Virus record (IMG/VR): IMGVR_UViG_3300021520_000002 | Location: 186,001-250,000 of that record | DNA length: 64,000 nt | Reading direction: 5' to 3' (one strand) | Shown: positions 2,506 through 64,000 of the stretch, one piece after another | Layout of the letters: every line of letters starts with the position of its first letter | Numbering within the stretch: the stretch's first letter is position 1 | The notes under the pieces: generated by a model | Databases searched by the model: none | Told to the model about the DNA's origin: nothing | The model's input: the letters and a program-made list of their open reading frames with translations, nothing else | Translations under genes and position numbers: made by a program

Positions 2506-2564
2506 TACTTCTCCTTAGATTATATTTACTAATAGTAAAATTTCTATATAAAAGATGAAACTTT

Positions 2565-3251
2565 TTATACTCCTTCTTTAACATCACCGTTTGGTAAAAT
2601 AACTTTATCTACTTCTTTTTTAAAAGTGTTAAAATTTTTAAGTTTTTTATAAATTTTTTGTTGTTCTTTTTGTATACTTTTTTTAGTTTCAGGTAAGTAA
2701 TATTTTGCATAACCTTTTTCGCCAAATTTATTTGAAAGATGATCAAAAGATCTTTGAATAAGTTGTTCTCTATCCATATCTAAATAATTATCTTTTCCAT
2801 AAAGATATGATCTTTTAATCATTAATTTTAGAGACGGTGTTTTATCACTATCTTGAATAATCTTTCCAAGTAGTGTTCTTGGAGTGTTAGGATTAGATGC
2901 ACGATGATCTTCACATGCATCGGCAATATCTTTAATTTGTTCTTCAGTAAACCATTTCTTAAGATTTTTGTCCGCTAATACGAATTTAGCAGAATTAATA
3001 TGATGTTCTTCTCTACCTTTTGGAATACCAACATCATGGTATGCTGCCGCCGCGAAAGTCATATTAACATCAACTTTTCTTTTTACAGCTAAATCTAATG
3101 CTGTATTCATAACTAATTTAACATGATCTTGCCGATGACCAGAATCATGTTTATCATACATGGGTATAATTTTTGATTCAATATATTCTTTTAATTCTGG
3201 ATTTACCAATTCTATATTTTCTACTTCAAATAAATAAGATATGCTAATCAT
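2565..3251 (-). CDS. HD-domain phosphohydrolase
   Basis: H..H, AAAYHDVG, EDHRAS, IQDSD motifs. Confidence 0.88.
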   Translation of the reverse strand: MISISYLFEVENIELVNPELKEYIESKIIPMYDKHDSGHRQDHVKLVMNTALDLAVKRKVDVNMTFAAAAYHDVGIPKGREEHHINSAKFVLADKNLKKWFTEEQIKDIADACEDHRASNPNTPRTLLGKIIQDSDKTPSLKLMIKRSYLYGKDNYLDMDREQLIQRSFDHLSNKFGEKGYAKYYLPETKKSIQKEQQKIYKKLKNFNTFKKEVDKVILPNGDVKEGV

Positions 3252-3268
3252 AATTAAGCTCCTAAATA

Positions 3269-3559
3269 TTATTTTCTATTATACCCATATTTATCTCGAA
3301 AAAAATTAAGATTATTTATAGACTTTTTTAAATTTTCAACATCTTGTTTTGGAGATGTTACTTGTTTTGGTATTTTCTGAACTGTTTTTTCTTTTTCATT
3401 ATAAAAATATCCTTTTGCTGGAAATTCTATTCTTTGTAATAAACGTGGTTTTGTTTCATAAGGTTCTTTTTCAAAACGAATTCCATTAAATGCTGGATTC
3501 CATACCCAATCAAGACCAGTGTTAGTTTCAAATTCAAATAAATACCCAATATTAATCAT
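3269..3559 (-). CDS. Hypothetical protein with MIxIxYLFE N-terminus shared with the neighbouring HD protein
   Basis: ORF with SD GGAG; N-terminal similarity to 2565-3251. Confidence 0.65.
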   Translation of the reverse strand: MINIGYLFEFETNTGLDWVWNPAFNGIRFEKEPYETKPRLLQRIEFPAKGYFYNEKEKTVQKIPKQVTSPKQDVENLKKSINNLNFFRDKYGYNRK

Positions 3560-3585
3560 AATTAAACTCCTTAAAATAAAATAAA

Positions 3586-3834
3586 TAAAAAAGTCTTGAG
3601 ACCCCTTTTCGGGATCTCAATATCACGGTCTTTCGACCGGTAGTAAAAGGTGACTAGTTCTTTTACCATCTCTTGAACCCATACATCTGGGTTAGACCGA
3701 TTCTGGAAAGGTTAGTTAAAAGATTAGTCAAATCTTTTTACACCTTTTCTCGTCCAGCAAGAGAGCTAGTTTCGAGACTATGATACAAAGTAATATATCA
3801 CTTAGGATATATTACCTTTCATAGACCTGTCTAT
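3586..3834 (-). ncRNA. Putative structured ncRNA (about 245 nt)
   Basis: Promoter motif at 3842-3851; at least 7 hairpins (e.g. CGGTC-GAAA-GACCG); terminal hairpin TTGAGATCCC/GGGGTCTCAA plus U-tract; no ORF in track. Confidence 0.6.
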
Positions 3835-3861
3835 TATATTAATTTCTATATGAAAAAGAAG

Positions 3862-4010
3862 AAAATAAAATAATGTTACTTTCGTAACATTATTCTTCCT
3901 GTTGGTGGGTTATGACCCCACCGGGTGCGCGATATCACACCTTACTAGTAGTGAGAATGACTCACTACAGATCAAATTTCATAGGCTTATATCGAGCCTC
4001 AAAATGATCA
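3862..4010 (-). ncRNA. Putative structured ncRNA (about 145 nt)
   Basis: Promoter motif at 4021-4030; hairpins GTAGTGAG/CTCACTAC and GGTGGG/CCCACC; terminator AATAATGTTAC-GAAA-GTAACATTATT plus U-tract. Confidence 0.6.
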
Positions 4011-4058
4011 TACTATATTAATTTCTATATCAAATCTTTGAATAACAAAAAGGCGGAG

Positions 4059-4766
4059 TTATCCGCCTGTTAATTGATTTATGATAAGCTGGATTTTCTC
4101 AGGGATAGGAGCATTGAGATCAGGTTCATTAGTTGATCTGTAAATATGTCTTAACTCAATAATTTCGTTAAGGCATATTCCACAACTATGAACATGTTTT
4201 TCAATAACTGTCCTTTCCTCAAGATCAGAGTCGAAGAAGGCATATTTAGCCAACAATTCTGGTTCAATATGTTTCTGATGTTTTTCTTTCATTAACCTAT
4301 TAAACCCAAGTTGGATAAGATGTGGTAACATTTTATCGTTTGGTCCTGCATCCGGAGGAATTTCAGTAAACATCCAATGTTTAGTTGTGATTAAGTCTTT
4401 TTTCCACCATTTCAATTTGTTCTTGTCATATTCATATTTGAATAGATAGAACTTAATTTTGAAAAGATGGTCTAAATCATCAATCTTTTTTACAACATCT
4501 TCCCGATATCCAGTCTGTTTAAAAGCCGCTTTAAGGTTCCATAGGAATGTAAAATTCCATAAGAACGAGAATATTAAATCAGGAACTTCATTGTAATCGT
4601 CTTTATCTATACCATAAATAATTTGATAGTTAACTGTCGATTCAAGATCGGAAAGAGTTTTTTTACACTGGATTATCATATCAATAGCGCGTGAGACCAA
4701 ATGTCTCATATCCACAAATACATATCCACGTTTTTCTAAATCTTTTATTACCAGATTTATTATCAT
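4059..4766 (-). CDS. Protein with C-terminal anti-sigma-like zinc finger (zf-HC2/ZAS)
   Basis: HIEPELLAKY...IEKHVHSCGIC matches H..HxxxCxxC; own promoter motif at 4831. Confidence 0.6.
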   Translation of the reverse strand: MIINLVIKDLEKRGYVFVDMRHLVSRAIDMIIQCKKTLSDLESTVNYQIIYGIDKDDYNEVPDLIFSFLWNFTFLWNLKAAFKQTGYREDVVKKIDDLDHLFKIKFYLFKYEYDKNKLKWWKKDLITTKHWMFTEIPPDAGPNDKMLPHLIQLGFNRLMKEKHQKHIEPELLAKYAFFDSDLEERTVIEKHVHSCGICLNEIIELRHIYRSTNEPDLNAPIPEKIQLIINQLTGG

Positions 4767-4851
4767 ATCTCCTCCTTTAATTTTTAAAATAATATATTAG
4801 AAACTTTATTGTTCCTAATTATACTATATCATTTCTATATGAAAAAGGAGA

Positions 4852-5079
4852 AAACAAAAAGAGAATTTTTTACGTGTCTCTATTCACGGGTTAGAACCAT
4901 TTTTCAGATTTTTATTATCTTAGGTTCACCAAACCTAGGGATTTTTCTCGATTCCCAATCGGACCAATTTGAAGGGTGGTCGTAGACGCTTTATTAAGCA
5001 TCTGGGGCACATAATGTTACTCCCCGTTCCCGTCAGCACTATTTGCGGTTCATATGCTGATCTTTATTAGTCCCTTGTA
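4852..5079 (-). ncRNA. Putative structured ncRNA (about 220 nt)
   Basis: Promoter motif at 5088-5097; GC-enriched serial hairpins (TCAGCA/TGCTGA, AGATGCTT/AAGCGTCT, TAGGTT/AACCTA); U-rich end; no ORF in track. Confidence 0.55.
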
Positions 5080-5113
5080 TTATATTAATTTCTATATGAA
5101 AAACTTGAAAATA

Positions 5114-5389
5114 AAAACCTTTTTAAGGCTGGTTAGGCCTGTTGATCGACTTTTTTAAATATTCGATCAACTGTTTATATGTAGCTGCAAAAGTTGAAGG
5201 ATGATCATATACATCATCCTCTTCATGTCTATATTCTACGATATATTTTTTCGTAGGCATATAAACAATATCTTTTACAGTTATTGAATATACTCCGTGA
5301 TCTCCACGGATGATGATTGGATTATCAATAACTTTTGCTAATCTAATCAATATATCCTCCTTAAAACCTTTTTAAGGCTGGTTAGGCCT
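5114..5389. repeat. 27-bp perfect direct repeat AAAACCTTTTTAAGGCTGGTTAGGCCT at 5114-5140 and 5363-5389
   Basis: Read directly; brackets the 75-aa ORF. Confidence 0.9.
5123..5350 (-). CDS. Hypothetical protein
   Basis: TTG start with SD GGAGG. Confidence 0.65.
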   Translation of the reverse strand: MIRLAKVIDNPIIIRGDHGVYSITVKDIVYMPTKKYIVEYRHEEDDVYDHPSTFAATYKQLIEYLKKSINRPNQP

Positions 5390-5409
5390 AAGACCTCTTT
5401 TTGAGCTGG

Positions 5410-5997
5410 TCAGGCTCCTTCTAAGCCGCGGGAGACTTCTAATACACGAAGATTCCAGATGTCTCTTCTATATCCATACATAAGTGATTCTGCATCTGGT
5501 AATGACCATTCAAGAATTTCCTTTATATTAAAAGGATAACCTGAGAATGGTAATTCACCAAGATAACAATCTCTTGTATGATTATAGTATTGACAATTAT
5601 CTAGAATACATTCAGCACATTCACAATCAGTACATACTATAGAACGGAATTTAACTATTATATAGTTTAATTCCATCTCAAGCATTTTCTGAAAGGATTC
5701 TGTGTTGAAAACGTGATGTGAAGTTCTGAAACAACGTTGATCAACATAACAGTCGCGTTCCCAATACGATTCAGTCAAGTAGTATTTATGTTCCCAACAC
5801 TCTTGACTACAGTCACCCGGTTCATCAGGAATATTTCCCCATTGATCCGAACTGTGATCGTGAATCGCAAGGCAATAATCATTGCACTTGCTTTCACCAT
5901 CTTTACAGTTGTGACAAATCGTATCGTTGATAGCTTCTGATGTTTGAAGAAACGATGAGATGATATCAATAACAATCCTATCAAAGGCTGTTTCCAT
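5410..5997 (-). CDS. Cys-rich hypothetical protein, start revised to METAFD
   Basis: SD GGAGG before ATG at 5997; several CxxC clusters. Confidence 0.7.
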   Translation of the reverse strand: METAFDRIVIDIISSFLQTSEAINDTICHNCKDGESKCNDYCLAIHDHSSDQWGNIPDEPGDCSQECWEHKYYLTESYWERDCYVDQRCFRTSHHVFNTESFQKMLEMELNYIIVKFRSIVCTDCECAECILDNCQYYNHTRDCYLGELPFSGYPFNIKEILEWSLPDAESLMYGYRRDIWNLRVLEVSRGLEGA

Positions 5998-6007
5998 AAT
6001 ATCCTCC

Positions 6008-6181
6008 TTAGTTTGTTTTCTTCTTTCTTTTTCTTCTTCCCCAACAGAGTTTATCATCAGTCCAAGATAAGTTTGTATCCATATCTGATATTCTAATACA
6101 TCCACATGGAAGTTTTTCGAGTTTCCAATTAGGATGATCAAAAGATATTTGAAGCATTCTTTCTTGTAACTCTTTTTCCAT
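6008..6181 (-). CDS. 57-aa basic protein (MEKELQERM...LPCGC...GRRKRKKKTN)
   Basis: Not in ORF track; SD AAGGAG; stop abuts SD of next gene. Confidence 0.65.
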   Translation of the reverse strand: MEKELQERMLQISFDHPNWKLEKLPCGCIRISDMDTNLSWTDDKLCWGRRKRKKKTN

Positions 6182-6332
6182 GTTCTTCTCCTTTATTTTT
6201 ATTTACAGAATAAGAGATATCGATATATAATCGACACCTTATTCCCATGCTTTAACGCGAAAGGTTTTATCGCAACTCAGCTCCGCACGTTTACATGTAC
6301 GCTGAGATTCTAACGGACTACAGTACGGAATG

Positions 6333-6404
6333 TTACTTCCGTGCTGCAGGACATGTTCCAGCATTGCCACAGGCTCCGCATGGAATTCTACACTTGGTAG
6401 TCAT
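6333..6404 (-). CDS. 23-aa Cys-rich peptide MTTKCRIPCGACGNAGTCPAARK, probably leaderless
   Basis: ATG just downstream of promoter motif 6416-6425; similar to C-terminus of 63482-63694. Confidence 0.45.
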   Translation of the reverse strand: MTTKCRIPCGACGNAGTCPAARK

Positions 6405-6570
6405 GTACTATATTAATTTCTATATGATCTTTTTGAATATACAAAAATCTTGCAGATATATAGAAATAATAGCCTATACAAAAATGGGTGGAGAAAGAAC
6501 CCCTTATTAAGTCTTCCATAGGCTGGAATTGTTATTAAGGTGCCTATGTTCTTTCCCCACAAATTAGAAA

Positions 6571-7074: not shown

Positions 7075-7086
7075 AAATTTTCCTCT

Positions 7087-8994: not shown

Positions 8995-9003
8995 AATTAA
9001 CTC

Positions 9004-9201
9004 CTATGGAAATCTATGATTTGTATGATTTGGTTTTAAATTTTTTAACTGTTCAAAATTCTTTCCATATCTTTTTGTAAAATCTCCAGGTTTATTTAAA
9101 TTAGAATCATAAAATGGAACCATACAAACAAATTTTTCAAATTGTCTTCTCGTTTCTATTTCTTTTCTGCCTTCTTCTGTTCGACCATCTATAATTTTCA
9201 T
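9004..9201 (-). CDS. Hypothetical protein
   Basis: ORF within operon. Confidence 0.55.
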   Translation of the reverse strand: MKIIDGRTEEGRKEIETRRQFEKFVCMVPFYDSNLNKPGDFTKRYGKNFEQLKNLKPNHTNHRFP

Positions 9202-9212
9202 ATACTATACCT

Positions 9213-9495: not shown

Positions 9496-10648
9496 CATTT
9501 GTGTTAATCTAAGATCGCGACTCTTAGACTTCTTCTTTTAAAATAAATAAAAGAAGAACCCATAGTTACCTATGGGATCAGACTATATCATCATCCTATT
9601 ATTTTCCTAAAAATTGTTCAAATAATTTAATATTATTCCATTTTTCATTTATTTCATCATTTTTTGATTCATTTTCAGTTTTTGATAATGGTCTAAGATT
9701 TTTTAATGACCAACATTTTTCAAAATTTGAATCTTCAAACGATTTGATATTAAAAGCTATTATTGGAACAATATGATCAATAACCCAATAATTACCATAA
9801 TTATTCCAATTCATTTTATCATCAAACTGTTTTTCAAGATGTTTCATAAGATCAGTAAGATTATATCCAACAAATTTTAACCAACTTTTTCCTTCTTTTT
9901 TACCTTTTAATATTCCCCAAATAGCTCTACTTACAAGTTTTCTTAATCTAAAAGAAGGATCTGTTTTGTATTTATTTTTGATGTATTCTTTTTTCTTTTC
10001 CATTATTTTATCTTTATTATTTTCAAAATATTTTCTATCTTGTTCTCTTTTTTTCTCTGGATGTTCTTTATAATAAGTTTTTTGTTTAGCTAAAAGTTCG
10101 TTTTTATTTTCTTCCCAATGAGCTTTTCGTTCATCCTGATGTTCTAAACAGTAATTTTTATGATATTCAACTCTTTCATCTTTGTGTTTTTCATAATATC
10201 GGTCAGTTTGAGCTTTATGTTTATCAGGATGATTTTTTCGATATTCTTTTACATTCAGATAATCACAAGGTTTACAATAATATTTATATTTTATTGTACC
10301 GTTTTTTGTTTTATATGCTGGAAATTCAATAATATCTTTTTCTTGTCCACATTTACCTCTACAAATTCTTGTTTTCATAATTTTATTATTCCTCCTAGAA
10401 ATTATTAAATGATGATATAGTCTAATTTAATAATTTCTATATAAGAATCTTAATTACTAAATAATAGGATGCCTCGCGCTTCCGTCCGCTTGGACGTACT
10501 CCCTTTCGGGATAGTCGTTACACCTTCAGTTAATATAGTTCGCAGCTATATTAAAAGCTTGGCTCGGTATTGTCCTATTTCTAGGAGTTTCACCGAATTC
10601 ACGAGGTTATTCGAATATCATTACTGATATAAGCCGCTTAATAGATTA
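9496..10648 (-). mobile_element. Group I self-splicing intron (1153 nt) with homing endonuclease in the P8 loop
   Basis: 5' splice U.G pair in P1 (CCGU/GCGG); P10 CUAUU/AAUAG; core elements GAAUUCGGUGAAA, AAUACCGAGCCAAG, GUAACGACUA, GAUAUAGUCU; P8 CAUCCUAUU/AAUAGGAUG; omega-G at 9496; removal restores frame. Confidence 0.9.
9599..10378 (-). CDS. Intron-encoded HNH homing endonuclease
   Basis: N-terminal Cys motifs; WVIDHIVP...NLRPL...NESKND; own SD and promoter motif at 10433. Confidence 0.88.
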   Translation of the reverse strand: MKTRICRGKCGQEKDIIEFPAYKTKNGTIKYKYYCKPCDYLNVKEYRKNHPDKHKAQTDRYYEKHKDERVEYHKNYCLEHQDERKAHWEENKNELLAKQKTYYKEHPEKKREQDRKYFENNKDKIMEKKKEYIKNKYKTDPSFRLRKLVSRAIWGILKGKKEGKSWLKFVGYNLTDLMKHLEKQFDDKMNWNNYGNYWVIDHIVPIIAFNIKSFEDSNFEKCWSLKNLRPLSKTENESKNDEINEKWNNIKLFEQFLGK

Positions 10649-11664
10649 ACGGGATCACGTTTATAGATCACAACTTTTCCATCAACAATTTCTTCTGCTA
10701 CATGAATGAAATATTGTTTAAGTTGTTCTGATACTATATTTGGTTTACTTATTAAACTTGCAAATAATCTCTTAAGATCATTTACATCTGGTGGAACTTC
10801 TGATTTCAGAAATTGTTGGATTATTCCAAGAGCACTACTATCTTTTTTTAAGATATAATTAATTGCAAATGGTTCATATAATTTTAAAACTACTTGCCAA
10901 GGCAATCCAACTGTTCCAAGTTTAAGAGTGTGATCTGTTGTAATAACTAATCTTGCCGAATAATCAGTAGTTTTTCTTAATAATCCACCTCTGATTAATC
11001 CAGATTTTCCTTTCATTCTACTTTTAATCCAGTTATTTGTATCTAATAAAGTATGTTGAATTTGTTCCATAATTGGGACTTTAATATCATCTGGTAATTC
11101 TGGAGCGAAATACTTAATATTTCTTATTAGAGAGCCATAAAATTCTGACAAATCTGAAAAGTTAACAATAGTTTGTCCAGATGTTTTACTAACGGCAAGA
11201 TCTCTAATTCCAGCTGGTAAAAGTATAAATTTATCAATAAAGATTTTATTTTTATTTTCTTTAATAAACTTCACATTTTCTGGTTTATTCTTTTTATATT
11301 TATCTAAATTAATTTTATCAAAAATTGATACTAAATAACCTATACCTGAATTTCCACTTGCATCTTCAATAACTTCTCCTGTTGCTGATAAACTATATTT
11401 CCCTTTATTCTGTAAAAGTTTAGATATGTTTGTATCTAATCCAGATACAATTGAATAAGCTTCAGGATGTATTAATTTTGTTTTCAAATTAACATATGCA
11501 AAAGTTTTTCTACGTTCTGCACTTCCGAATCTTCCAAAAATCTCTTCTGAAAATAATCCATTAGGATCAGTTTTTCCAACTTTTTCATAAAGACGAACAG
11601 TTGTTACTTCTTTTAGTTTGTTTTTTGTTATGAATTCATCAATATCTAATAATTTAAGTTTCAT
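10649..11664 (-). CDS. rpoC: RNA polymerase beta'-like subunit (second RNAP), exon 1; spliced product about 432 aa
   Basis: GLFSEEIFG, LPAGIRD, KGKSGLIRGGLLRKTTDYSARLVI. Confidence 0.88.
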
Positions 11665-12690: not shown

Positions 12691-12721
12691 TATATTAATT
12701 TCTATATGAAAAACTTAAAAA

Positions 12722-13056: not shown

Positions 13057-13157
13057 AATATTATTTCTATATATAAATAGAGATTATCAAATTAATGTAT
13101 TTTATAATTTAATAGAGCTTCCTCGCCATTCCACGGAAGCTCTTATAAGACTATTGG

Positions 13158-20630: not shown

Positions 20631-20892
20631 TTTTAACTCCTTCAAAATAAGAAATAGAGAAGGAAATATTTATCCTTCTCTATATTATTTCTATATGAAA
20701 CTAATTAATCTACAATTTCAGAAGCTCTCTTTCGAGCATCTTTAATTACATCATAATGTTCATAAATTATATCAAATGTTTTAAACATATCATCAATTGT
20801 AATATTTTTTACTTTCTCTCCCTCAATCCTTTCCTCTTTATCAATATCCATTAATACTTTATGTCTAGCTTCATTCATAGGACAAGAATCTC

Positions 20893-28928: not shown

Positions 28929-29044
28929 ACCATTTTCTCCATTCTTTTATTTATCTAAAGAGTAACATTTCTATATAAAAATAGAAAATTATCCTTCTAC
29001 TTTATATTATTTCTATATAAACTATTTGAATATAAAAATGGAGC

Positions 29045-34422: not shown

Positions 34423-35592
34423 TTATACTCCTATAAATTGTCCGAAATGATCAACTTTTGTAGTAGGTACAACAAATACTGTTTCACCTGGATTCTGATT
34501 ACTAATTGATATCGGACAGATTCTCTGAAAATGGGTTTCATGTAAATTAGCTATAATACTTGGAGCATTTTCACTTCCAGGATTCATCATATTAACTTTA
34601 TGTTGAAGCATTCCTGAATACGCATTTACACTATCATAAATAAATTTATTGTGTAAGTTTGTTTGAAAATGTTTTGTTATTTCCATAAGATCCATTGCTA
34701 TCTCATCAACTTTATATCCTTTAGCTGTCATTATTGCATAATGACCAATACGCTTAAATAATGGTTGTAATAAAGCTTCTAAAAATATTAATCTTTTATA
34801 TTTTAAATCAATAAATGTTTCTTCAGTAGTTACAGAACATAATTCTGCCGCTATCTCTAAAACTTTTACTATTGTTAATTCTTCTTCTTTAACATTATAA
34901 CAATTTTGATAAAGTAGTTTTGTATATCCATCAAAGAATAATTTTTTCATATGATTTAAAATATCATTTCTAATTGGTTCACAACCAAACATTTTATGAA
35001 AATAATTTAACACATCTTGTTCTGTTGTTGTTGTATTATTAATTGGAATATTTAATCTAGTAGATAAGATTTGTTTTATTTGTAATAAATTCAAATCAGA
35101 ATCTGGAAGAATAACATTCAAAAAATGTGCTGCTGGAATATTTATGCCGATAAATGTAACAAGTTTATCATACATTGATATTGAATTGAATAAACTTGTA
35201 AGTTTAATTGATTTCTTTTTAATTACTATGGGTTTATCAATAATATATAATGTTGGTACATAATAGTTTCCATTTAATATAAAGAAACAGTCATTTAATA
35301 AAGTTGGTAAAATTAATCTAAACATTATTTTAACATCATTGGTATCTTTAACTTTTGTATAAACAACAACTTTAGTATAATGACTATCATTAATTCCCAT
35401 ATACTCTGGTATTTTCATTATGTTTATCATATGTAGTTGTAAGTAATTATTATTTTGAGCGGACAAATATTCAATACAAAGATTTATAAAATATTTAATC
35501 ATAGCATCATCATATTGAATTCTCCTAAAATCTCCAATTACAATTTCAAGAGGATTACTTTGTAATTCTTGTTTTTCAGGTAATAGATTCAT
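34423..35592 (-). CDS. rpoB: RNA polymerase beta subunit, N-terminal part
   Basis: LPTL...FFILNG; LHETHFQRICPIS...NPG matches HxTHYGRxCPxET. Confidence 0.72.
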   Translation of the reverse strand: MNLLPEKQELQSNPLEIVIGDFRRIQYDDAMIKYFINLCIEYLSAQNNNYLQLHMINIMKIPEYMGINDSHYTKVVVYTKVKDTNDVKIMFRLILPTLLNDCFFILNGNYYVPTLYIIDKPIVIKKKSIKLTSLFNSISMYDKLVTFIGINIPAAHFLNVILPDSDLNLLQIKQILSTRLNIPINNTTTTEQDVLNYFHKMFGCEPIRNDILNHMKKLFFDGYTKLLYQNCYNVKEEELTIVKVLEIAAELCSVTTEETFIDLKYKRLIFLEALLQPLFKRIGHYAIMTAKGYKVDEIAMDLMEITKHFQTNLHNKFIYDSVNAYSGMLQHKVNMMNPGSENAPSIIANLHETHFQRICPISISNQNPGETVFVVPTTKVDHFGQFIGV

Positions 35593-40978: not shown

Positions 40979-41893
40979 TCTACATAAGTATTATTTCTAT
41001 ATAAAGAGTTTGAATATGAAATTATTTTTTTGGGGTTTTTATTAATTTAGTTAAATATGTATCTTGACAGTCATCACATCTAATATAAGGTTTTTCAATT
41101 TCTTTTCCACAACGACATTTATTAGTTTGTGATTCTTTTTGATCTCCAAAAACTGTGTCATAATTTACATTATTATCCATTTAAATGATCTCCCTTAATG
41201 GTTGGAAAACTTTTATCAATCTATAAAAATCACTTTTTCTAATTCTTACTTTTTTACCTTCTGTAGAAAATATTATATAATCTTCATCAAGATCTTCATA
41301 AATTTCCATCACTCCATAATCATATTCTTCAAATTGACTTTCTATTTGTTTTTCTATATCTATGGTAATTTTTATCATATTTCTCCTTTTTCTTTTTCAT
41401 TATATTTACAACATGTAGAATCTTCACCTGATTGATAATGTCCATCAAATATACATTTTTCATTATCATCTAATTTACAAAGAACTTTTCCACATTTTTC
41501 ACATATCATTTTTCTCTGACAGATATTACAATCTTTATTCATGTTATTACCTTCCTTATTGATAGGAATGTAAACCTTTTCCAAGTTTAGAAAGTAGTCG
41601 ATTTTTTGGATCGACATGTTTGTTTTGATTATTAAACATCTGTGGTTCTTTAAATATAATTGGAAAAGGTTTCAGAACTTCTTGTTTAACTAATTTTTGT
41701 TCTTCTATATATGTTTTAAAAGTCATTGGTTTAATTTTAATTGCTGGGGTAACATGGTTAGTTGACTCTTCATAATAAAAACAATCATCAGACGGTGAAT
41801 GTGCTGTTGATGTTATTGGTGTTTGATCTGCTAAAGTTGTCCAAGTACCAGTGCTATTATATCTATTATAATAAGATACCATATTTAACCTCT

Positions 41894-51059: not shown

Positions 51060-53048
51060 TTACACTTGACCTAGCCAAATCTTTTCATAAATTGTTAATA
51101 TTGGACTATCTATTACTTCTTCCATATCAAGTTCTATTTTCTCAACTGAATTTTTATTTGGTTGATATAAAAGACCTAATAATGGACTTATATAACTTGC
51201 TAATTGTTTATCACCAAGTTTGAATGTTGGAGTTTGACTTTGATTATATCTCCAAAATACTTTATTATCATAATCTACTAGGAACATATTTGCAAATAAC
51301 ATTTCAATAAATGAACTGTAAACTGTTCCTACACTTAACATTAAAGTCATAAAATCTTGATAATATTCTTTTGGTGTTTTTGTTAATTTACTTTGTTGTT
51401 TTAACACATTTTTAACTTGATTCATAACAGATATAACATCTTCATTTTTTACTACTTTAGAATCAGCTCTGAATGAAAGTTGATTAGTTTTATAATCAAT
51501 ATTCATTAATCCAGGTATATCAGATAAAATTTTATCTGTTAGAATATCTGGAAATTCATTAGTGTCAAAAGTTAGAATTGTTTGCTCATTAATTCTTTCA
51601 ACATTAATCAAATGATCTCTAAAAAATTCTAAAACTTCTTTATTTTTTGGTAAATTTGCACCACCTGATACATGAAAAGTTCGAAGGATTAATTGTGTTA
51701 TCCTTTCGACCACACTTTGACCTGCAGTGATACCAACATACTTTGTTGGAAATTCTCTTGCACCAAAACATTTTCTACAAATTTTAAAATTTGGTTCTTC
51801 ACAAGTTATTAAAGAACGAATATAGATTTTATTATTTATAAATTTTATAGCTTCTGAAAGAGTTAAAACTTTCCATTCAAGTTCAGTACTTTGTGGATCT
51901 CTATAATATTTTCCAACTAAAGTTTGTGCATGTTTCTGTGAAGTTACAATAATATCTAAATAATTTTCAGTTCCACAATCATCTGATTCTAGTTCCATGA
52001 CCGAAAGTCCCATAACTATTGTTCTTTCAAGATACCCAGAATCTGGCGTCCATTTAGCCTTGTCCTGGATACTTTTTCTTGTTCCTGGAGCGACTATAAA
52101 AAATTCTTCTTCTGTTAAACCTTCTAAAAGAGAGGTTTTAATTGGAATTGGAGTAATATTATTTTCCGCGTCAGCGCTATATCCGATCGAGATACAAGAT
52201 CTTGCCAATTGTAATTTAGAAAATCTTGAACCTGATTTAAATAACTTATATAAATTTGATTCTTTATCAAAATGTTTTAAACATCTTTCAACAAGAGATT
52301 CATTTATATAATAACCTAACATTATATTATCATTAGGTATTTGTTTAAGCAATCTAGTTGTTTCATCATCTTTAAGATCAACCATTTCTAAAACATCTAA
52401 ACTTGGTGAATGCTTTGTAACTGATATGAAGAAGAATAGTTTCTTTTCAAGATCAGTTAATCGATCATAATATTTTTTATTATCTTTTTCATTTTCAAGA
52501 ATTAAACGACTAATCTCATTAGAATAATCTTTTTTAACACTTTTATTAATTATTATATTATTAAAACCACACCATTTATTGAATAAACACATTCCATATG
52601 GTACTAGTTTATTTTTAAATTTAACGGCAGAATATAATTGATCATTCCATAATTCTATAGTTTCTGGAAGATCATTAAGATCATCTATTTCTAATATAAT
52701 TTTGGTTTTATCAAATTCTGTTCTTGTTAATACAAATGCAGCATACAAAGCTTCATATCTCACTGTTGATAAAAAATTGGAATTTTGATCATAATGAATT
52801 GTATTCATCCAAAATGCTTTCTGTTCCAGTTCTTTTAATGCATCAATATCATGAACAATATATATCGCACATGTGTCTCCATCAAAATCTGCATTTAAAG
52901 CTTCAAGCATAAGCGGACTGATTTGAATTGAATCATTATCTCCATCCTCAATCGCTTCGATTAAAACTCCAACACAACTATGACGCCATAATGAAGGTTG
53001 TCTATTAATAAATGCTATCCTTTTTAATTTATTTAAAGATTTGTTCAA
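51060..53048 (-). CDS. rpoC: RNA polymerase beta' subunit, catalytic middle/C-terminal part
   Basis: NRQPSL, NADFDGD, KSGSR, SLLEGL, RKSIQDKA..TPDSGYLER, DDCGT, C..CFG, VGITAGQS, TQLILRTFH. Confidence 0.95.
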   Translation of the reverse strand: MNKSLNKLKRIAFINRQPSLWRHSCVGVLIEAIEDGDNDSIQISPLMLEALNADFDGDTCAIYIVHDIDALKELEQKAFWMNTIHYDQNSNFLSTVRYEALYAAFVLTRTEFDKTKIILEIDDLNDLPETIELWNDQLYSAVKFKNKLVPYGMCLFNKWCGFNNIIINKSVKKDYSNEISRLILENEKDNKKYYDRLTDLEKKLFFFISVTKHSPSLDVLEMVDLKDDETTRLLKQIPNDNIMLGYYINESLVERCLKHFDKESNLYKLFKSGSRFSKLQLARSCISIGYSADAENNITPIPIKTSLLEGLTEEEFFIVAPGTRKSIQDKAKWTPDSGYLERTIVMGLSVMELESDDCGTENYLDIIVTSQKHAQTLVGKYYRDPQSTELEWKVLTLSEAIKFINNKIYIRSLITCEEPNFKICRKCFGAREFPTKYVGITAGQSVVERITQLILRTFHVSGGANLPKNKEVLEFFRDHLINVERINEQTILTFDTNEFPDILTDKILSDIPGLMNIDYKTNQLSFRADSKVVKNEDVISVMNQVKNVLKQQSKLTKTPKEYYQDFMTLMLSVGTVYSSFIEMLFANMFLVDYDNKVFWRYNQSQTPTFKLGDKQLASYISPLLGLLYQPNKNSVEKIELDMEEVIDSPILTIYEKIWLGQV

Positions 53049-58120: not shown

Positions 58121-58149
58121 TTTTCCTCCGAAAAATATTTGATATTAAA

Positions 58150-58920
58150 TTTATTATTTCTATAAATAAATAGAAATTTTATTTTAAAAAGAAAAGATCA
58201 AGAAAAGTTCAGGAGTCTACCATTTAAGATAGACTCCTGATTTGTACATCAACCATTTTCCATTTTTTGTATAAAATTTTATTTTTAAATAATATTTCAA
58301 ATTAAAATCTTTTTAATTAGTTCAATGAACTGGGTACCATGTTACAGAATAACTACTTTCCATTTAGCCCTTCCTCCTTTTTTGAGTTTTGCTACATTCA
58401 ATTATTTCTATATTAAATAACTGAATATACAAATTAATTTCTATATGAAATGATTAAATATTAACTTTATTTGAACTGAATAATTTCAACTTTTTAAATA
58501 TAAAGTTTAAATTAATCTGAACAATATGTATATAGAATTGAATAAGAAAAAATAATGTTCATCTTTAATATAGAAATAATACTCAAAAAGAAAAAGTGGG
58601 AAGGGATAAAAAAAGTAATGGTTATAAAGAGTAAGTCAATAATGTTGTTCATGTCTATCAACATTAACTATACTCTTCCATATAAAACTTCGATTGTTAT
58701 TATCTGTAGATTCGACTGCCATGCTATCCTTTCTTTAAGAAACAGATTCAGAAAAGAACCAAAGAATTTCAGTAATTTCTATTTGAAGATACAGATAAAA
58801 GATTCAACTTCAAAATCATTTGGTTAGGAATTTCAAAAACTATTCCTTAATTTATTTACGGCCGGCGCGCGAGCTAAAAATAGTAAAAATAATTTTTCTA
58901 TTTTCCTATAGAAATAATAA
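58150..58920. promoter_or_regulatory. Divergent promoter region; ATATAGAAAT motif on minus strand at 58156, 58404, 58437 and on plus strand at 58568, 58907
   Basis: Motif orientation flips where gene orientation flips. Confidence 0.7.
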
Positions 58921-59035
58921 TTTTGTAAAAAGTGAAATGTTGACATCGATGTGCCTATCAATGTCAGCGGCTAACTCTTATCGTCTTTAAATAAAAAAGA
59001 TCATTAGACGATTGATCTAAAAAACAGGAGGTAGT

Positions 59036-59881: not shown

Positions 59882-59956
59882 AATAGAGTAAGCTGATAAT
59901 TGATGGGCACATTTTTCTAATTGTATATAGAAATGGTAGTTTTGGAGGCGGAAAAA

Positions 59957-61651
59957 ATGGATATAGAAATAAATAATATGCATGTTTTTGTTAGTAACTA
60001 TTCTTTTACCGGAGTAGTTAAAACATCACTTGTAAAGGATTTTCATTTATTAAAACTTAAAATTGAATTTTTTAAAATTTTAAGTAATGATAGTAAAATA
60101 ATTTCAATGATATCAAAGACTTGTCAAGAAGATCCAAGAAACGGTAACTCTTTAGGACTTGTAAGTACAAAAGTTGATTATGAAAAAGTTTTGAATTTTT
60201 ATGATGCGGAAGAATTTAGAAATTATTTGCATTTTATAACGGCAAGACCATTCTTAGATGATAAAGTTAATGGTCAGTTATGGACAATTGAATTTAAATT
60301 TCAGAATGATGTACATTATTATAAGGTGTTATTAAGTACAAATGAAGTGTTAAGATTATATAATGTTGTTAATTCTTATTATTCTCTTTATTTTGCTTTA
60401 GATTTTATTGTAAAAGAACATTCAAATCTAGCTCCAGTAGAAAAAGTTGAAGAGAAAAAAATAACAGAATATATTCCAAGCAGAAAAGAAGTTGTTGAAG
60501 AAAAATTTGAAGTTAAGGAGAGAAATGGAACAGATGATATTTTTGAATTATGTTTAACAAATTCAATTAAGTCAAGCTTGATTCATTATACAACCAATTA
60601 TTTTAAATTCTTTTCATCAGAACATTGTAAGATTGTTACTAATGATCAGAAGACACAAATTAAAGTAGTTTGTCCGATATTAATTCCTGGAAAGTTTAAT
60701 ATTGATGAGAACTATTTTAAATCTTTAATTGTGACATCATCATTACATTTGGATAGTATAACTTTTACAATTAAGAAGATTTTATCTTTGCTATTACAGA
60801 GTTATGATAAATATAATAATCCTCTACATTTAATGATGATTAGTTATTTATTATTTGTATATATGTTAAGATATATTTATGATGTGAACAGAGATATATT
60901 TAGAGATTATTTTACTAAATTTATTTGTGTTCCAGAGATGCAGAGACATTTAATTATGAATTTAATTCGTAATAATTTTTCGGATTATCACAATAAAATC
61001 TTCTTTGATTTTATAGCTGTTAATCCTCAGGATATTATGAATGAACAGACAAATAAAGAAATAAACACATTTTCTGAAACTTATAAACATCTTCTTCCGA
61101 TTTCACAAGAAGAATTTGCCGATAAAGTATTCAATAGTCTTAATGGTCAAAATAAAAAATTTCCTGTTGACTTTAAAATAGCCAACAAGAAAATGATAGA
61201 CATTAAAAATCTATTTGAAGAGAAACCAAAACAAACATTACAATCAAAATTGTTTGATTATGAAGGAACATTAGATACAACAGCTGGAATATTTAATGAA
61301 TATACTTTTTTAAATTATACAAAGAATAATGGAAGTAAAATTATAAGTAAAACATATAAACATCTTTTAGATTATATTCAGAATCCATCTTCTCTTCTAT
61401 TAATGAATGAAAAAGATGTGCCAAAAGATGTTCTTAATTTATTTGATTTACTTTCAAAATCAGTTCTAAATACAGAGAAATTAGCTAAGGATAATATATC
61501 AACATTAAATTATTATAATATATTAGTTGAATCTTTGCCGAATGCAAATTTATTTAAACATACAACTTTATTATATGTTGTATATCAAATCATGGTACCT
61601 TATTATTATGATGTCTATGGTACAACACAATTTTATGATAATTTTTTATAG
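59957..61651 (+). CDS. Large hypothetical protein, start revised to MDIEIN
   Basis: SD GGAGG after promoter motif at 59925. Confidence 0.75.
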   Translation: MDIEINNMHVFVSNYSFTGVVKTSLVKDFHLLKLKIEFFKILSNDSKIISMISKTCQEDPRNGNSLGLVSTKVDYEKVLNFYDAEEFRNYLHFITARPFLDDKVNGQLWTIEFKFQNDVHYYKVLLSTNEVLRLYNVVNSYYSLYFALDFIVKEHSNLAPVEKVEEKKITEYIPSRKEVVEEKFEVKERNGTDDIFELCLTNSIKSSLIHYTTNYFKFFSSEHCKIVTNDQKTQIKVVCPILIPGKFNIDENYFKSLIVTSSLHLDSITFTIKKILSLLLQSYDKYNNPLHLMMISYLLFVYMLRYIYDVNRDIFRDYFTKFICVPEMQRHLIMNLIRNNFSDYHNKIFFDFIAVNPQDIMNEQTNKEINTFSETYKHLLPISQEEFADKVFNSLNGQNKKFPVDFKIANKKMIDIKNLFEEKPKQTLQSKLFDYEGTLDTTAGIFNEYTFLNYTKNNGSKIISKTYKHLLDYIQNPSSLLLMNEKDVPKDVLNLFDLLSKSVLNTEKLAKDNISTLNYYNILVESLPNANLFKHTTLLYVVYQIMVPYYYDVYGTTQFYDNFL

Positions 61652-62247: not shown

Positions 62248-62610
62248 AAGAGATAAAAGAAAATCGAAAATATTTTATTATAAATTTAGATGAAAGTTAT
62301 GCGCCAAAAATATTTCAAGTTTTGAAAGAAGAAGAAATGAAAGCTGGTAGATGGCCAGAAGGTGATATTACATTTGAACAATGGATTTTTGATACTTATG
62401 GTCAAGAAGGACTAGATTATTTAAAGTTTAATAAAGTTTGATATTCAATGAATTTATATAGAAATTAAATGGTATAGAAAGATAAAAAATATAAAGGATT
62501 TTTCGTGACGTATTTTTTGGTCATGTTTTTTCTTTCTGGACAAAAGATTTTGTGAAGTGTTGTAAGATATTTTACAAAGTCTTTTGTTTGTATTCTTTTT
62601 TGGGGGTTTT

Positions 62611-62928
62611 ATGAAAGAATTAAATGATGATAATTTTGCTGAAGAAGTATATACAACTAAAAAACCAATATTAATTGAGTTTATGGCTCAATGGTGTGTA
62701 GTATGTAGAGAATTTGATAAGAAATTGGAACAACTAAAAAAAATTTATGGTGATAAAGTTGTGTTTGCAAAAGTTGATATAGATGAGAGTTTTAGATTAT
62801 CATCTGGATTTAATATTGATAAATTACCAACATTTATTTTATACTATAAAAGAGAACCTATGAACTTTATTATTGGAGCGGCAAATTTGTCAGAATTTAA
62901 AACTGCTATTGATGAAGTTATAAACTAG
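62611..62928 (+). CDS. Thioredoxin (WCVVC)
   Basis: FMAQWCVVC, AKVDID, LPTF. Confidence 0.88.
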   Translation: MKELNDDNFAEEVYTTKKPILIEFMAQWCVVCREFDKKLEQLKKIYGDKVVFAKVDIDESFRLSSGFNIDKLPTFILYYKREPMNFIIGAANLSEFKTAIDEVIN

Positions 62929-62959
62929 CTAATACCTCTTTCCATTTTTTCTCCTTCCT

Positions 62960-62990
62960 TAGGGGTGATAGCTTTTCCACTATCACCCTA
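62960..62990. terminator. Hairpin between convergent transcription units
   Basis: TAGGGGTGATAG/CTATCACCCTA. Confidence 0.5.
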
Positions 62991-62992
62991 CT

Positions 62993-63169
62993 TTAAACAA
63001 ATAAAAAACTGGCATTACGTTCTCGATATGAGTCGCGTAATGCCAATTTGTTTTGTTTTCTGTTGTAGCCCTTCTTCCCCTTTTTAGAGGTTTGAGGTCC
63101 ACCATGTGAAGAGATATAAAGGACTTCCTCAACAATTCGCCGATGTTTCAGTTTCTTTTCTTTTTTCAT
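62993..63169 (-). CDS. ArfA/BrfA-like alternative ribosome-rescue factor candidate (58 aa)
   Basis: Not in ORF track. SD GGAGG; MKKEKKLKHRRIVEEVLYISSHGGPQTSKKGKKGYNRKQNKLALRDSYRERNASFLFV; terminator before the stop codon. Confidence 0.6.
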   Translation of the reverse strand: MKKEKKLKHRRIVEEVLYISSHGGPQTSKKGKKGYNRKQNKLALRDSYRERNASFLFV

Positions 63170-63344
63170 AATTATCCTCCATTATCATTTTACTTACAAT
63201 TGCACATTTATGTTTTTGAACTAAACGAAATTCTTTATGAACTTCTTTGTGTATTTTAGTAGTTTTCTTTTTTTGAGAAAAACTAACATAAATAACTTTT
63301 GGTTTAGGAGTCCAATCTATTATTTCTTCCTCTTCTTCAATCAT
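63129..63344 (-). CDS. Hypothetical protein
   Basis: G-rich SD; follows promoter motif at 63379. Confidence 0.5.
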   Translation of the reverse strand: MIEEEEEIIDWTPKPKVIYVSFSQKKKTTKIHKEVHKEFRLVQKHKCAIVSKMIMEDNYEKRKETETSANC

Positions 63345-63481
63345 GTATCCCCCTTTTTTATAGTTTTATAAATATATTATTTCTATATTAAAATGAAGAA
63401 AAAACAAAAGGGTCAAGATTTCATGAGCGCGCCCCTTTGCGATACTTCAATCCATATAACCTCCTTGGCCACTAGGCCATT

Positions 63482-63694
63482 TTACATAGCTCTTACACAG
63501 GTTCCAGCCATTCCACAAACGGAACAGCTTATACCAAGTGAACATCTCGTTTTCTTTTTCGGACGAGTCTTGTGCAGAACGTCGTTGAAATATTTTCGAG
63601 ATTTATGTTCAGTTTCAGCCGCTTTGTGTATTTCTACACTTAAAAAAGCGTTCTGAAGCTTACGAGCCAAAGTTGAATCTTGTAAAATTTGCAT
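63482..63694 (-). CDS. Small protein with C-terminal CxxCGxAGTC motif
   Basis: SD AGGAGG; promoter motif at 63727. Confidence 0.65.
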   Translation of the reverse strand: MQILQDSTLARKLQNAFLSVEIHKAAETEHKSRKYFNDVLHKTRPKKKTRCSLGISCSVCGMAGTCVRAM

Positions 63695-63756
63695 GTTCTC
63701 CTCCTAGAGTTTTTTGTTACTTTATTATTTCTATATGAAATCTTTAAAAATAAAAA

Positions 63757-63898
63757 CAAACAAAATTTTCATATGATACGAATATCACATGAAAATCTTG
63801 CCGGTAGAACAATTTCTTAAACCAGCAAGTGGTTCAGAACAGGAACATCTACAGCCTACTGTAGCGTCCTTCAACTAAAGGTTACCCTTTAATCTATA
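63757..63898 (-). ncRNA. Putative structured ncRNA (about 140 nt); 3' end of a related unit at 63945-64000
   Basis: Promoter motif at 63906; hairpins TAAAGG/CCTTTA, CTACAG/CTGTAG, AACCA/TGGTT; terminator TTTTCATGTGATA/TATCATATGAAAA plus U-tract. Confidence 0.58.
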
Positions 63899-64000
63899 CT
63901 TATTAATTTCTATATGAAAAGCTTGAATATCAAAAAAAGAAAATAAACAAAGAACTTATGTGATATAAATATCACATAAATCCTTCGCCAGTCGGAGCAA

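What the first reader, a model, noticed from the sequence alone, without database searches (positions are those of the whole stretch)
2540..63915. Phage-specific promoter motif ATATAGAAAT(T/A)AT, about 25 copies
Seen: minus-strand copies at 2540, 3842, 4021, 4831, 5088, 6416, 10433, 12698, 13063, 20687, 28967, 29009, 38177, 40993, 49497, 58156 (variant), 58404, 58437, 63379, 63727, 63906; plus-strand copies at 6458, 58568, 58907 (variant), 59925, 62456. All are intergenic, nearly all point into the downstream gene or RNA, and several have a TTCAA element a few bases upstream. Inference: promoter of one phage RNAP; it is not a sigma70 consensus and does not match the phiKZ or AR9 promoters I recall.
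Basis: partly seen in the sequence, partly recalled or inferred. Interest (0 to 1): 0.62.

Follow-up and report, generated by a model that had tools for sequence, protein, structure and literature searches.

The report
Early promoter of a jumbo phage
The repeated ATATAGAAAT word is real and is most likely the early-gene promoter of an uncultured 286-kb phage that carries its own two bacterial-type RNA polymerases; this kind of signal is known from giant phages such as AR9 and phiKZ, but this sequence and phage group are new.

Summary
The window has 26 exact ATATAGAAAT copies against 1.65 expected.

The window is bases 186001-250000 of a 285.6-kb IMG/VR phage record (GC 29%). A 40-nt weight matrix finds 57 strong sites in the whole genome. 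Of these, 55 are intergenic and 54 point into the next gene. 53 lie in the minus-strand replication, nucleotide and RNAP block, and only 4 lie in the structural block.

The motif is about 40 bp long: TTnAATaTT(C/T)AA, a short gap, then TTT(C/T)ATATAGAAAT(A/T)ATA. Many copies sit just after a terminator hairpin. Sigma-70-like sites are not enriched, and no sigma gene was found.

The phage encodes two multisubunit RNAP sets. One resembles the AR9 non-virion enzyme. The other resembles virion-type beta subunits.

The same motif, upstream half included, is kept in relatives whose RNAP beta is only 46-81% identical. At about 35% identity the core drifts to TATAGATAT.

Best reading: early promoters read by the injected virion RNAP, as in AR9 and phiKZ. 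This is a new member of a known kind. The transcription start and the polymerase are inferred, because no RNA data could be obtained.

The parts
2540..2549 (-). promoter copy (core 10-mer; the full motif runs about 21 nt upstream and 12 nt downstream). It is 34 nt before the 88-aa ORF 2239-2505, which leads into the ribonucleotide reductase operon.
   Evidence: (22.3 bits)
3842..3851 (-). promoter copy, followed by an ORF-less structured unit of about 250 nt that ends at terminator 3596-3620
   Evidence: 33.3 bits; z -7.3
4021..4030 (-). promoter copy directly after terminator 4051-4068, followed by an ORF-less unit of about 150 nt
   Evidence: 28.6 bits; z -5.3
4831..4840 (-). promoter copy, 64 nt before gene 4059-4766 (235 aa)
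   Evidence: (36.8 bits)
5088..5097 (-). promoter copy, followed by an ORF-less unit of about 215 nt
   Evidence: (35.5 bits)
6416..6425 (-). promoter copy, followed by a structured stretch of about 200 nt up to hairpin 6215-6239; the next gene starts at 6181
   Evidence: (28.6 bits)
6458..6467 (+). doubtful copy. The core is exact, but the upstream half of the motif is missing (below 14 bits). It lies back to back with 6416(-) and points antisense into gene 6571-7074(-).
10433..10442 (-). promoter copy, 54 nt before an HNH/endonuclease VII-like gene (9599-10378). Both lie inside a 1.15-kb insertion that splits the set-A beta' gene.
   Evidence: (29.4 bits)
12698..12707 (-). promoter copy after terminator 12724-12751, followed by an ORF-less unit of about 200 nt that ends at terminator 12497-12523
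   Evidence: 34.5 bits; z -5.7
13063..13072 (-). promoter copy, followed by an ORF-less unit of about 330 nt that ends at terminator 12724-12751
   Evidence: 30.5 bits; z -4.8
20687..20696 (-). promoter copy before a cluster of small ORFs
   Evidence: 27.2 bits
28967..28976 (-). weaker promoter copy, in tandem with 29009; 38 nt before the exonuclease-like gene 27969-28928
   Evidence: (16.7 bits)
29009..29018 (-). promoter copy, 80 nt before gene 27969-28928
   Evidence: 32.5 bits
38177..38186 (-). promoter copy, 49 nt before the set-B RNAP beta C-terminal gene
   Evidence: (33.4 bits)
40993..41002 (-). promoter copy before gene 40112-40978
   Evidence: 30.0 bits
49497..49506 (-). promoter copy, 78 nt before ORF 49107-49418. 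The conserved hairpin 49450-49478 lies in the leader. The same arrangement occurs in relative L022.
   Evidence: (21.6 bits)
58156..58165 (-). variant copy (TTATAGAAAT), 35 nt before gene 56975-58120, at the head of the operon that holds the set-B beta' genes
   Evidence: (16.1 bits)
58404..58413 (-). promoter copy in the divergent control region 58121-59035
   Evidence: (26.0 bits)
58437..58446 (-). promoter copy, in tandem with 58404
   Evidence: (29.0 bits)
58568..58577 (+). weak plus-strand copy in the divergent region
   Evidence: (14.2 bits)
58906..58915 (+). variant copy (CTATAGAAAT), 120 nt before gene 59036-59881
   Evidence: (24.2 bits)
59925..59934 (+). core-only copy (below 14 bits), 22 nt before gene 59957-61651; a possible weak promoter
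62456..62465 (+). promoter copy with an upstream TATTCAA, before ORF 62584-62928
   Evidence: 26.8 bits
63379..63388 (-). promoter copy, 34 nt before ORF 63129-63344
   Evidence: 30.5 bits
63727..63736 (-). promoter copy, 32 nt before ORF 63482-63694
   Evidence: 39.7 bits
63906..63915 (-). promoter copy, followed by an ORF-less unit of about 150 nt
   Evidence: 35.0 bits; z -7.7
   Evidence: 17.9 bits
36157..38127 (-). RNAP set B, beta C-terminal half (656 aa); nearest characterised relative is AR9 g089, a non-virion RNAP subunit
34423..35592 (-). RNAP set B, probable beta N-terminal half (389 aa)
   Evidence: PDB 7S00 chain c, E 1.2e-4; a gene of this size follows the beta-C gene in L022-L025
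54184..55374 (-). RNAP set B, beta' N-terminal part (396 aa)
51060..53048 (-). RNAP set B, beta' C-terminal part (662 aa), carrying NADFDGD
10621..11664 (-). RNAP set A (virion-type), beta' N-terminal exon 1. Exon 2, which carries GADHDGD, lies at about 9213-9494. The rest of set A lies just outside the window, at G000 177910-184858.

Best explanation
The motif is the promoter of the phage's early (non-structural) transcription units. It is a one-directional element of about 40 bp: TTnAATaTT(C/T)AA, 3-4 nt, then TTT(C/T)ATATAGAAAT(A/T)ATA.

A phage-encoded multisubunit RNA polymerase recognises it. The most likely reader is the virion-type enzyme (set A: a 1548-aa beta plus split beta' pieces), which would enter the cell with the DNA. 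Transcription would start at a purine 6-9 nt after the last T of the core, that is +15 to +18 counted from the first T of TATAGAAAT. That places the core around -10 and the two upstream blocks around -20 and -30.

From these promoters the phage would express replication and nucleotide-metabolism genes, many small ORFs, about ten ORF-less structured RNAs, an intron-borne homing endonuclease, and the genes of the second polymerase (set B, non-virion type). Set B would then transcribe the structural genes from other, unrecognised promoters.

Shown here: the motif, its placement and orientation, its conservation, and the two polymerase sets. Inferred: which enzyme reads the motif, the start site, and the timing.
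For: 1. Enrichment: 26 exact 10-mers against 1.65 expected in the window. The genome has 84 exact 9-mers, and 66 of them fall in the 8% of DNA that is intergenic. The 40-nt matrix gives 65 sites at 14 bits or more and 0 in shuffled genomes.

2. Flanks that were not used to pick the sites still add about 12 bits. The same upstream block (TT at -20/-19, A-16, T-15, T-12) recurs in genome G001, whose beta is 48% identical.

3. Of 57 sites at 20 bits or more, 55 are intergenic and 54 are followed by a co-directional gene. The median distance from the core end to the start codon is 65 nt, and 36 of 54 are within 130 nt.

4. 39% of sites have a strong hairpin just upstream, against 7% of control positions. 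Terminator-like sites are enriched (16 against 3.6).

5. Density is 3.4 sites per 10 kb in the minus-strand block 107-264.5 kb, which holds RNR, helicases, ligase, exonuclease and RNAP genes. It is 0.37 per 10 kb in the block with tail fibre, baseplate and virion protein genes.

6. A copy sits 49 nt before the set-B beta gene and another heads the operon with the set-B beta' genes. Set B therefore cannot be the only reader.

7. Set B is nearest to the AR9 non-virion RNAP (g089; PDB 7S00). The set-A beta is nearest to the large beta-type subunits of phiR1-37, Staphylococcus jumbo phages and SPN3US gp241.

8. The motif is conserved at non-orthologous intergenic places in relatives with 81, 59, 48 and 46% beta identity. 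G001 has 74 copies against 6 for the reversed control. BLAST of a 2.9-kb stretch against G001 finds only the promoters. At about 35% identity the core becomes TATAGATAT or TATAGTTAT.

9. Literature: every RNAP-encoding jumbo phage has its own AT-rich conserved motif of about 10 nt near -10 of its early genes, attributed to the virion RNAP (PMC7598289). The AR9 early consensus is AAATATATATTAT-(6N)-G, and one such promoter lies inside an intron (PMC5312081). phiKZ and 201phi2-1 early promoters are conserved at -10, -20 and -30 (PMC11512511).

10. A purine occupies +18 in 79% of G000 sites and 88% of G001 sites, and +15 in 83-95% of G000 sites.
Against: - There are no RNA data.
- No virion proteome exists, so calling set A 'virion' rests only on weak homology (21-28% identity).
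- The set-A genes lie in the same minus-strand block, 3.7 kb downstream of a motif copy. A strong hairpin lies between, but their 'late' status is not shown.
- The RNAPs here are closer to bacterial RNAP than to the AR9 enzyme, so analogy with AR9 and phiKZ could mislead.
- A divergent sigma-like factor would escape the Pfam scans.
- The host is unknown.
Confidence: 0.65

Rival explanations
1. The motif is a promoter, but the non-virion polymerase (set B), perhaps with a fifth specificity subunit, reads it as a middle or 'continuous' class. The truly early genes would use another signal that was not detected.
For: The motif covers almost the whole non-structural half of the genome (53 sites). 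That is more than the 41 early promoters reported for AR9 (PMC5312081). In 201phi2-1 not all nvRNAP genes have early promoters (PMC11512511). Set-B subunits are strongly bacterial-like.
Against: Copies directly precede the set-B beta gene and head the set-B beta' operon, which creates a bootstrapping problem. In AR9 and phiKZ the nvRNAP promoters are short and weakly conserved, whereas long AT-rich motifs belong to the vRNAP (PMC7598289). No second over-represented motif was seen in intergenic DNA.
Confidence: 0.15
2. The host RNA polymerase reads the motif, either with a host alternative sigma factor or after modification by an injected phage factor.
For: The element is bipartite, with blocks about 20 bp apart, as in sigma-dependent promoters. 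The CATATAG part faintly recalls the -10 elements of sporulation sigma factors (my own recollection, not tested). The host is unknown.
Against: - There is no -35/-10 pair at 16-18 nt.
- Sigma-70-like sites are not enriched.
- No sigma domain is encoded.
- In bacterial genomes the 18-mer occurs as single chance hits, while multi-copy contigs are phage contigs binned into unrelated MAGs.
- The motif tracks phage RNAP divergence.
- The phage carries two complete RNAP sets. In AR9 and phiKZ, two such sets make the host enzyme dispensable (PMC7598289).
Confidence: 0.1
3. The motif is not a promoter. It would be an operator for a phage regulator, or the conserved end of a small mobile repeat.
For: The core has partial dyad symmetry (ATATA-GAAAT-TATAT in some copies). 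Copies are scattered and are the only DNA conserved between distant genomes.
Against: Orientation follows the downstream gene strictly (54 of 57). Sites lie between terminator and RBS and in front of ORF-less units that end in terminators. The flanks beyond about 40 bp are unrelated. The motif as a whole is asymmetric.
Confidence: 0.03

Closest known systems
Early (virion-RNAP) promoters of Bacillus phage AR9/PBS1: AAATATATATTAT-(6N)-G(+1)
   Same: Both are conserved AT-rich elements of about 13 nt with a T-rich region upstream. Both occur in tens of copies, lie in front of early genes including non-virion RNAP genes, and have one copy inside an intron driving an intron-borne gene. In both cases the phage has two split multisubunit RNAPs (PMC5312081). 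In an ungapped comparison made by eye, ATATAGAAATAAT and the AR9 13-mer agree at 9 of 13 positions.
   Different: The sequences differ: here there is an invariant G in the middle and a conserved second block about 15-20 nt upstream. RNAP subunits are only about 23% identical and are closer to bacterial RNAP than to AR9's. The start site and timing are not measured here. It is unknown whether the DNA contains uracil.
Early promoters of phiKZ and 201phi2-1 (Chimalliviridae)
   Same: These are AT-rich, highly conserved, and conserved at about -10, -20 and -30. Those phages also have sequence-conserved terminator hairpins (PMC11512511, PMC7598289). Here there are three conserved blocks and a 26-copy conserved hairpin.
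   Different: This is a different phage lineage. Nucleus formation was not examined.
Bacterial sigma-70 (sigma-A) promoters
   Same: Both are bipartite, AT-rich, upstream of genes and follow terminators.
   Different: There is no TTGACA/TATAAT pair at 16-18 nt. The most conserved base is a G inside TATAGAAAT. The sigma-70 scan gives 93 sites against 85+-9 expected. No sigma gene was found.
T7-type promoters of single-subunit phage RNAPs
   Same: Both are long, nearly invariant, phage-specific promoter words repeated through the genome.
   Different: No T7-like RNAP domain was found (the control genomes cannot validate this negative). The polymerases present are multisubunit.

Membership tests
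[quoted passage not shown] | The genome encodes two sets of beta/beta'-like RNAP subunits, split into several polypeptides. | tested here: met
   Set B has four pieces, at window 54184-55374, 51060-53048, 36157-38127 and 34423-35592. Set A comprises G000 177910-182556, G000 183080-184858 and window 10621-11664 plus exon 2.
[quoted passage not shown] | An over-represented, highly conserved AT-rich motif of about 10-13 nt, intergenic and co-directional with the downstream genes. | tested here: met
[quoted passage not shown] | The motif stands before non-structural genes, including non-virion RNAP genes, and is rare before virion genes. | tested here: met
   53 sites lie in the non-structural block and 4 in the structural block. 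Copies precede the set-B beta gene and the set-B beta' operon.
[quoted passage not shown] | The transcription start lies at a fixed distance (about 6 nt) downstream of the motif. | not testable with these tools
The only indirect evidence is purine enrichment at +15 and +18.
[quoted passage not shown] | Early transcription is independent of host RNAP and of new protein synthesis, and the RNAP subunits are present in the virion. | not testable with these tools
   This needs infection experiments and virion proteomics. The phage is known only from a metagenome.
AR9 early promoter consensus | The sequence AAATATATATTAT-(6N)-G. | tested here: not met
   The consensus here is (C/T)ATATAGAAAT(A/T)ATA, against PMC5312081 and the AR9 P087 sequence. 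The architecture is similar but the word is different.
Sigma-70-type promoter | -35 TTGACA-like and -10 TATAAT-like hexamers 16-18 nt apart. | tested here: not met
   The logo shows no conserved hexamer 16-18 nt from TTCAA or from TAGAAA. The scan shows no enrichment.

The most novel reading that the evidence does not exclude
The motif would define the early regulon of a large, uncultured jumbo-phage clade whose polymerases are closer to bacterial RNAP than those of AR9 or phiKZ. An injected, sigma-less multisubunit RNAP would read a 40-bp three-block promoter that has stayed fixed while the enzyme diverged to 46% identity. Among its first products would be about ten structured RNAs that belong to no known family. 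These could be a new class of early phage non-coding RNAs, for example takeover or anti-defence RNAs.
Probability: 0.25. Interest if true: 0.6.

Novelty: new member of a known kind. Interest (0 to 1): 0.42.

Why it matters
The motif gives a ready map of about 57 transcription units (25 in this window). It separates early from late modules in a phage clade known only from metagenomes.

It flags ORF-less early RNAs and an intron-borne endonuclease as independently transcribed.

It offers a defined DNA target for studying how a sigma-less, bacterial-like phage RNAP recognises promoters. No virion RNAP of a jumbo phage had been purified as of the 2020 review (PMC7598289), so an invariant promoter conserved across the clade would be a useful substrate.

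It also serves as a signature for picking out relatives, including phage contigs mis-binned into bacterial MAGs.

Tried and rejected
1. Reading the motif as a sigma-70 promoter. I tried TTCAAA as the -35, and TAGAAA as the -35 with a downstream TATAAT. No conserved partner hexamer exists at 16-18 nt.

2. The idea that the promoter core is re-used in the loops of the 26-copy conserved hairpin. TAGAAAT is in 20 hairpin loops against 1.7 for control permutations. However, the loops read CUA-GAAA-UAG or UUA-GCAA-UA, which are GNRA tetraloops closing a 13-16-bp stem. Selection at the RNA level therefore explains the resemblance, and I treat the likeness to the core as probably coincidental.

3. TAG recoding, suggested by the CTA-anticodon tRNA. 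Coding density hardly changes when TAG is read as sense.

4. Rfam families for the ORF-less units: none, even at E <= 1.

5. Similarity among the ORF-less units: only the promoter itself matches.

6. The search for related loci with the single beta protein found nothing. Relatives came from the word search and the contig look-ups.

7. The megablast against known phages gave no match.

8. The look-up of sequencing runs: the first call was one base too long. Later searches that included that stretch went only to phage and MAG records.

9. The records behind L023, L024, L079 and L080 are not held for whole-record scans.

10. The T7-like RNAP search was negative, but the controls cannot validate it.

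11. A literature search for the word TATAGAAAT found no phage promoter.

Full report
**Observation.** The word is in the sequence as described. Exact ATATAGAAAT occurs 26 times in the 64-kb window. Dinucleotide-preserving shuffles give 1.65 on average and never more than 6. The 13-mer ATATAGAAATWAT occurs 12 times against 0.15 expected. Neither has the flanking parts of the motif, and both are in or beside coding sequence.

**Context.** The window is bases 186001-250000 of a 285,572-bp IMG/VR virus record, estimated 95% complete. GC content is 29% and the standard genetic code fits. It has no near relative among sequenced phages.
- Genes run on the plus strand from 0 to about 107 kb. This block holds tail fibre, baseplate and virion protein genes.
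- Genes run on the minus strand from 107 to about 264 kb. This block holds ribonucleotide reductase, helicases, NAD ligase, exonuclease, endonuclease, a DHH phosphoesterase, many small ORFs and the RNA polymerase genes.

**Anatomy.** I aligned the 66 intergenic copies of the 9-mer TATAGAAAT. Conservation extends well beyond the seed. With the first T of TATAGAAAT as position 0:
- TT at -20/-19, A at -16, T at -15, TT at -13/-12, C/T at -11 and AA at -10/-9.
- TTT(C/T)A at -5..-1.
- (A/T)ATA at +9..+12.

These flanks add about 12 bits that played no part in picking the sites. A 40-nt weight matrix finds 65 sites at 14 bits or more in the genome and none in five Markov-shuffled genomes.

**Placement.** Of the 57 sites at 20 bits or more, 55 are intergenic and 54 are followed by a gene on the same strand.
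- 53 lie in the minus-strand block (3.4 per 10 kb) and 4 in the structural block (0.37 per 10 kb).
- The median distance from the end of the core to the start codon is 65 nt, and 36 of 54 are within 130 nt.
- 39% have a strong hairpin ending 11-42 nt upstream, against 7% of control positions.
- Hairpin-plus-T-run terminators are enriched in window 1-14000 (16 against 3.6), and several sit directly before a motif copy, for example 4051-4068 before 4021 and 12724-12751 before 12698.
- Eighteen sites have no gene start or further motif copy within about 110 nt downstream. About ten of these head units of 120-380 nt that have no convincing ORF, higher GC than the genome and low folding energies (z -4 to -8). 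Several of them end in terminators.

All of this is what a promoter should look like.

**Not a host-type promoter.**
- No conserved hexamer lies 16-18 nt from either TTCAA or TAGAAA.
- Sigma-70-like sites are not enriched (93 against 85+-9).
- No Sigma70_r2, r4 or r4_2 domain is encoded.
- No T7-like RNAP was found, though that negative is not validated.
- In bacterial genomes the 18-mer TTTCATATAGAAATAATA occurs as scattered single hits. Contigs with several hits are phage contigs binned into unrelated MAGs.

**Polymerases.** The genome has two multisubunit RNAP sets.
- Set B has four pieces in the window: beta' N (54184-55374), beta' C with NADFDGD (51060-53048), beta C (36157-38127) and a probable beta N (34423-35592). 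Its best characterised relatives are AR9 g089, annotated as a non-virion RNAP subunit, and the AR9 nvRNAP chains of PDB 7S00.
- Set A has a 1548-aa beta (G000 177910-182556), a beta' C piece (G000 183080-184858) and a beta' N piece (window 10621-11664 plus an exon carrying GADHDGD at about 9213-9494). Its beta is nearest to the large beta-type subunits of phiR1-37, Staphylococcus jumbo phages and SPN3US gp241. From my own knowledge, gp241 is a virion RNAP subunit; I did not confirm this from a paper.
- Both sets are more similar to bacterial RNAP than to AR9's.

**Which enzyme.** A motif copy stands 49 nt before the set-B beta gene, and another heads the operon that holds the set-B beta' genes. 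The set-A genes have no copy directly upstream. The nearest is 3.7 kb away, beyond a strong hairpin.

The literature describes the same pattern. Every RNAP-encoding jumbo phage has its own conserved AT-rich motif near -10 of early genes, attributed to the injected virion RNAP (PMC7598289). The AR9 consensus is AAATATATATTAT-(6N)-G, with 41 mapped early promoters, one of them inside an intron (PMC5312081). phiKZ and 201phi2-1 early promoters are conserved at -10, -20 and -30 (PMC11512511).

I therefore assign the motif to the virion-type enzyme. This is an inference by analogy, supported by the bootstrapping argument.

**Comparative evidence.** The beta protein has hundreds of metagenomic relatives.
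- In contigs whose beta is 81, 59, 48 and 46% identical, the same extended motif occurs only on the gene strand. The nine sites checked against the called genes in L022-L024 are all intergenic.
- The complete 314.8-kb relative G001 has 74 ATATAGAAAT copies against 6 for the reversed control. It has the same upstream block.
- BLAST of window 3560-6450 against G001 returns only the promoters.
- In two relatives at about 35% identity the core reads TATAGATAT or TATAGTTAT.

The word thus follows the phage lineage and its polymerase rather than any one locus.

**Start site.** No RNA data could be obtained. Position +18 is a purine in 79% of G000 sites and 88% of G001 sites, with C almost absent. 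Position +15 is a purine in 83-95% of G000 sites. If the 13-mer ATATAGAAATWAT is aligned with the AR9 13-mer, the AR9 rule (6 nt, then the start) lands on +18. I predict a start at +15 to +18. That puts the three conserved blocks near -10, -20 and -30.

**Verdict.** It is a new member of a known kind: the early promoter class of jumbo phages with their own multisubunit RNAPs. The word itself is new. No paper in the library reports it as a phage promoter. It is conserved across an uncultured clade.

**Seen in passing.**
- A 26-copy conserved RNA hairpin with GNRA loops lies 7-51 nt after stop codons, mostly 7-14 nt.
- A 1.15-kb intron-like insertion carrying a promoter and an HNH endonuclease splits the set-A beta' gene. 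It is absent from the continuous gene of relative G004.
- An amber-suppressor-type tRNA is present.
- About ten promoter-driven RNAs have no known family.

Noticed in passing
window 15435-15462, 30419-30447, 36123-36150, 40078-40105, 49450-49478, 51023-51050; 26 copies in G000: One sequence-conserved perfect hairpin, ATCGGCAAGATCT-loop-AGATCTTGCCGAT. All copies are intergenic and lie 7-51 nt after a stop codon, mostly 7-14 nt; two follow the set-B beta and beta' genes. In transcript sense the loops read CUA-GAAA-UAG or UUA-GCAA-UA, so the RNA would be a 13-16-bp stem capped by a GNRA tetraloop, without a clear U-tract. It is probably a phage-specific terminator or a 3'-end stabiliser, like the sequence-conserved terminators of phiKZ and 201phi2-1 (PMC11512511). 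It is present in relatives L022 and L023 but not in G001.
   Followed up: partly
window 3596-3841, about 3868-4020, about 4870-5087, 6215-6415, 12497-12697, 12724-13062, about 63760-63905; also G000 250102, 263540 and others: Units with a promoter, no convincing ORF, and in several cases a terminator (120-380 nt). GC is 0.31-0.44 against 0.29 for the genome, and folding z-scores are -4 to -8. There is no Rfam match at E <= 1, and the units resemble each other only in the promoter. These are candidate early non-coding RNAs of unknown family.
   Followed up: partly
window about 9495-10647 (-): A 1.15-kb insertion splits the set-A beta' N-terminal gene. Exon 1 ends near 10648. Exon 2 starts near 9491-9494 and carries GADHDGD. 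In relative G004 the two parts form one continuous frame.

The insertion holds a conserved RNA-like element of about 150-240 nt, a promoter copy (10433), an HNH/endonuclease VII-like gene (9599-10378) and a terminator (9559-9576). It is probably a self-splicing intron with a homing endonuclease, although Rfam intron models did not match.

A second copy of the element lies at G000 89097-89270. Relatives carry several copies, some inside their beta genes.
   Followed up: partly
window 46054-46128 (-): A tRNA with anticodon CTA (reads TAG; ARAGORN labels it Pyl). Reading TAG as sense hardly changes the coding density, so the genome does not appear to be recoded. The role of the tRNA is unknown.
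   Followed up: partly
window 51060-55374 (-): The two set-B beta' pieces are separated by five small ORFs (53072-54203). The relative L024 has only one ORF there. Set-B and set-A subunits score better against bacterial RNAP structures (E 1e-27 to 1e-42) than against AR9 nvRNAP (1e-12 to 1e-20).
   Followed up: no
window 6458-6467 (+): An exact core copy lies back to back with the 6416(-) promoter. It lacks the upstream block and points antisense into gene 6571-7074(-). It could be an antisense promoter or a chance or decayed copy.
   Followed up: no
L023 8111 (+), before gene 8153-9343: In a relative with 59% beta identity, a motif copy stands directly before a TnpB/OrfB_IS605-type gene inserted next to the RNAP beta gene.
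   Followed up: no
L085 and others (CAZRCF010000001.1, 256.7 kb); L100, L122, L131, L153; L116, L117, L128: Contigs carrying several copies of the 18-mer, and a beta protein 54-58% identical, are filed in MAGs labelled Lentimicrobiaceae, Nitrospiraceae and Patescibacteria. These are most likely phage contigs mis-binned into bacterial genomes, and they give no consistent host.
   Followed up: partly
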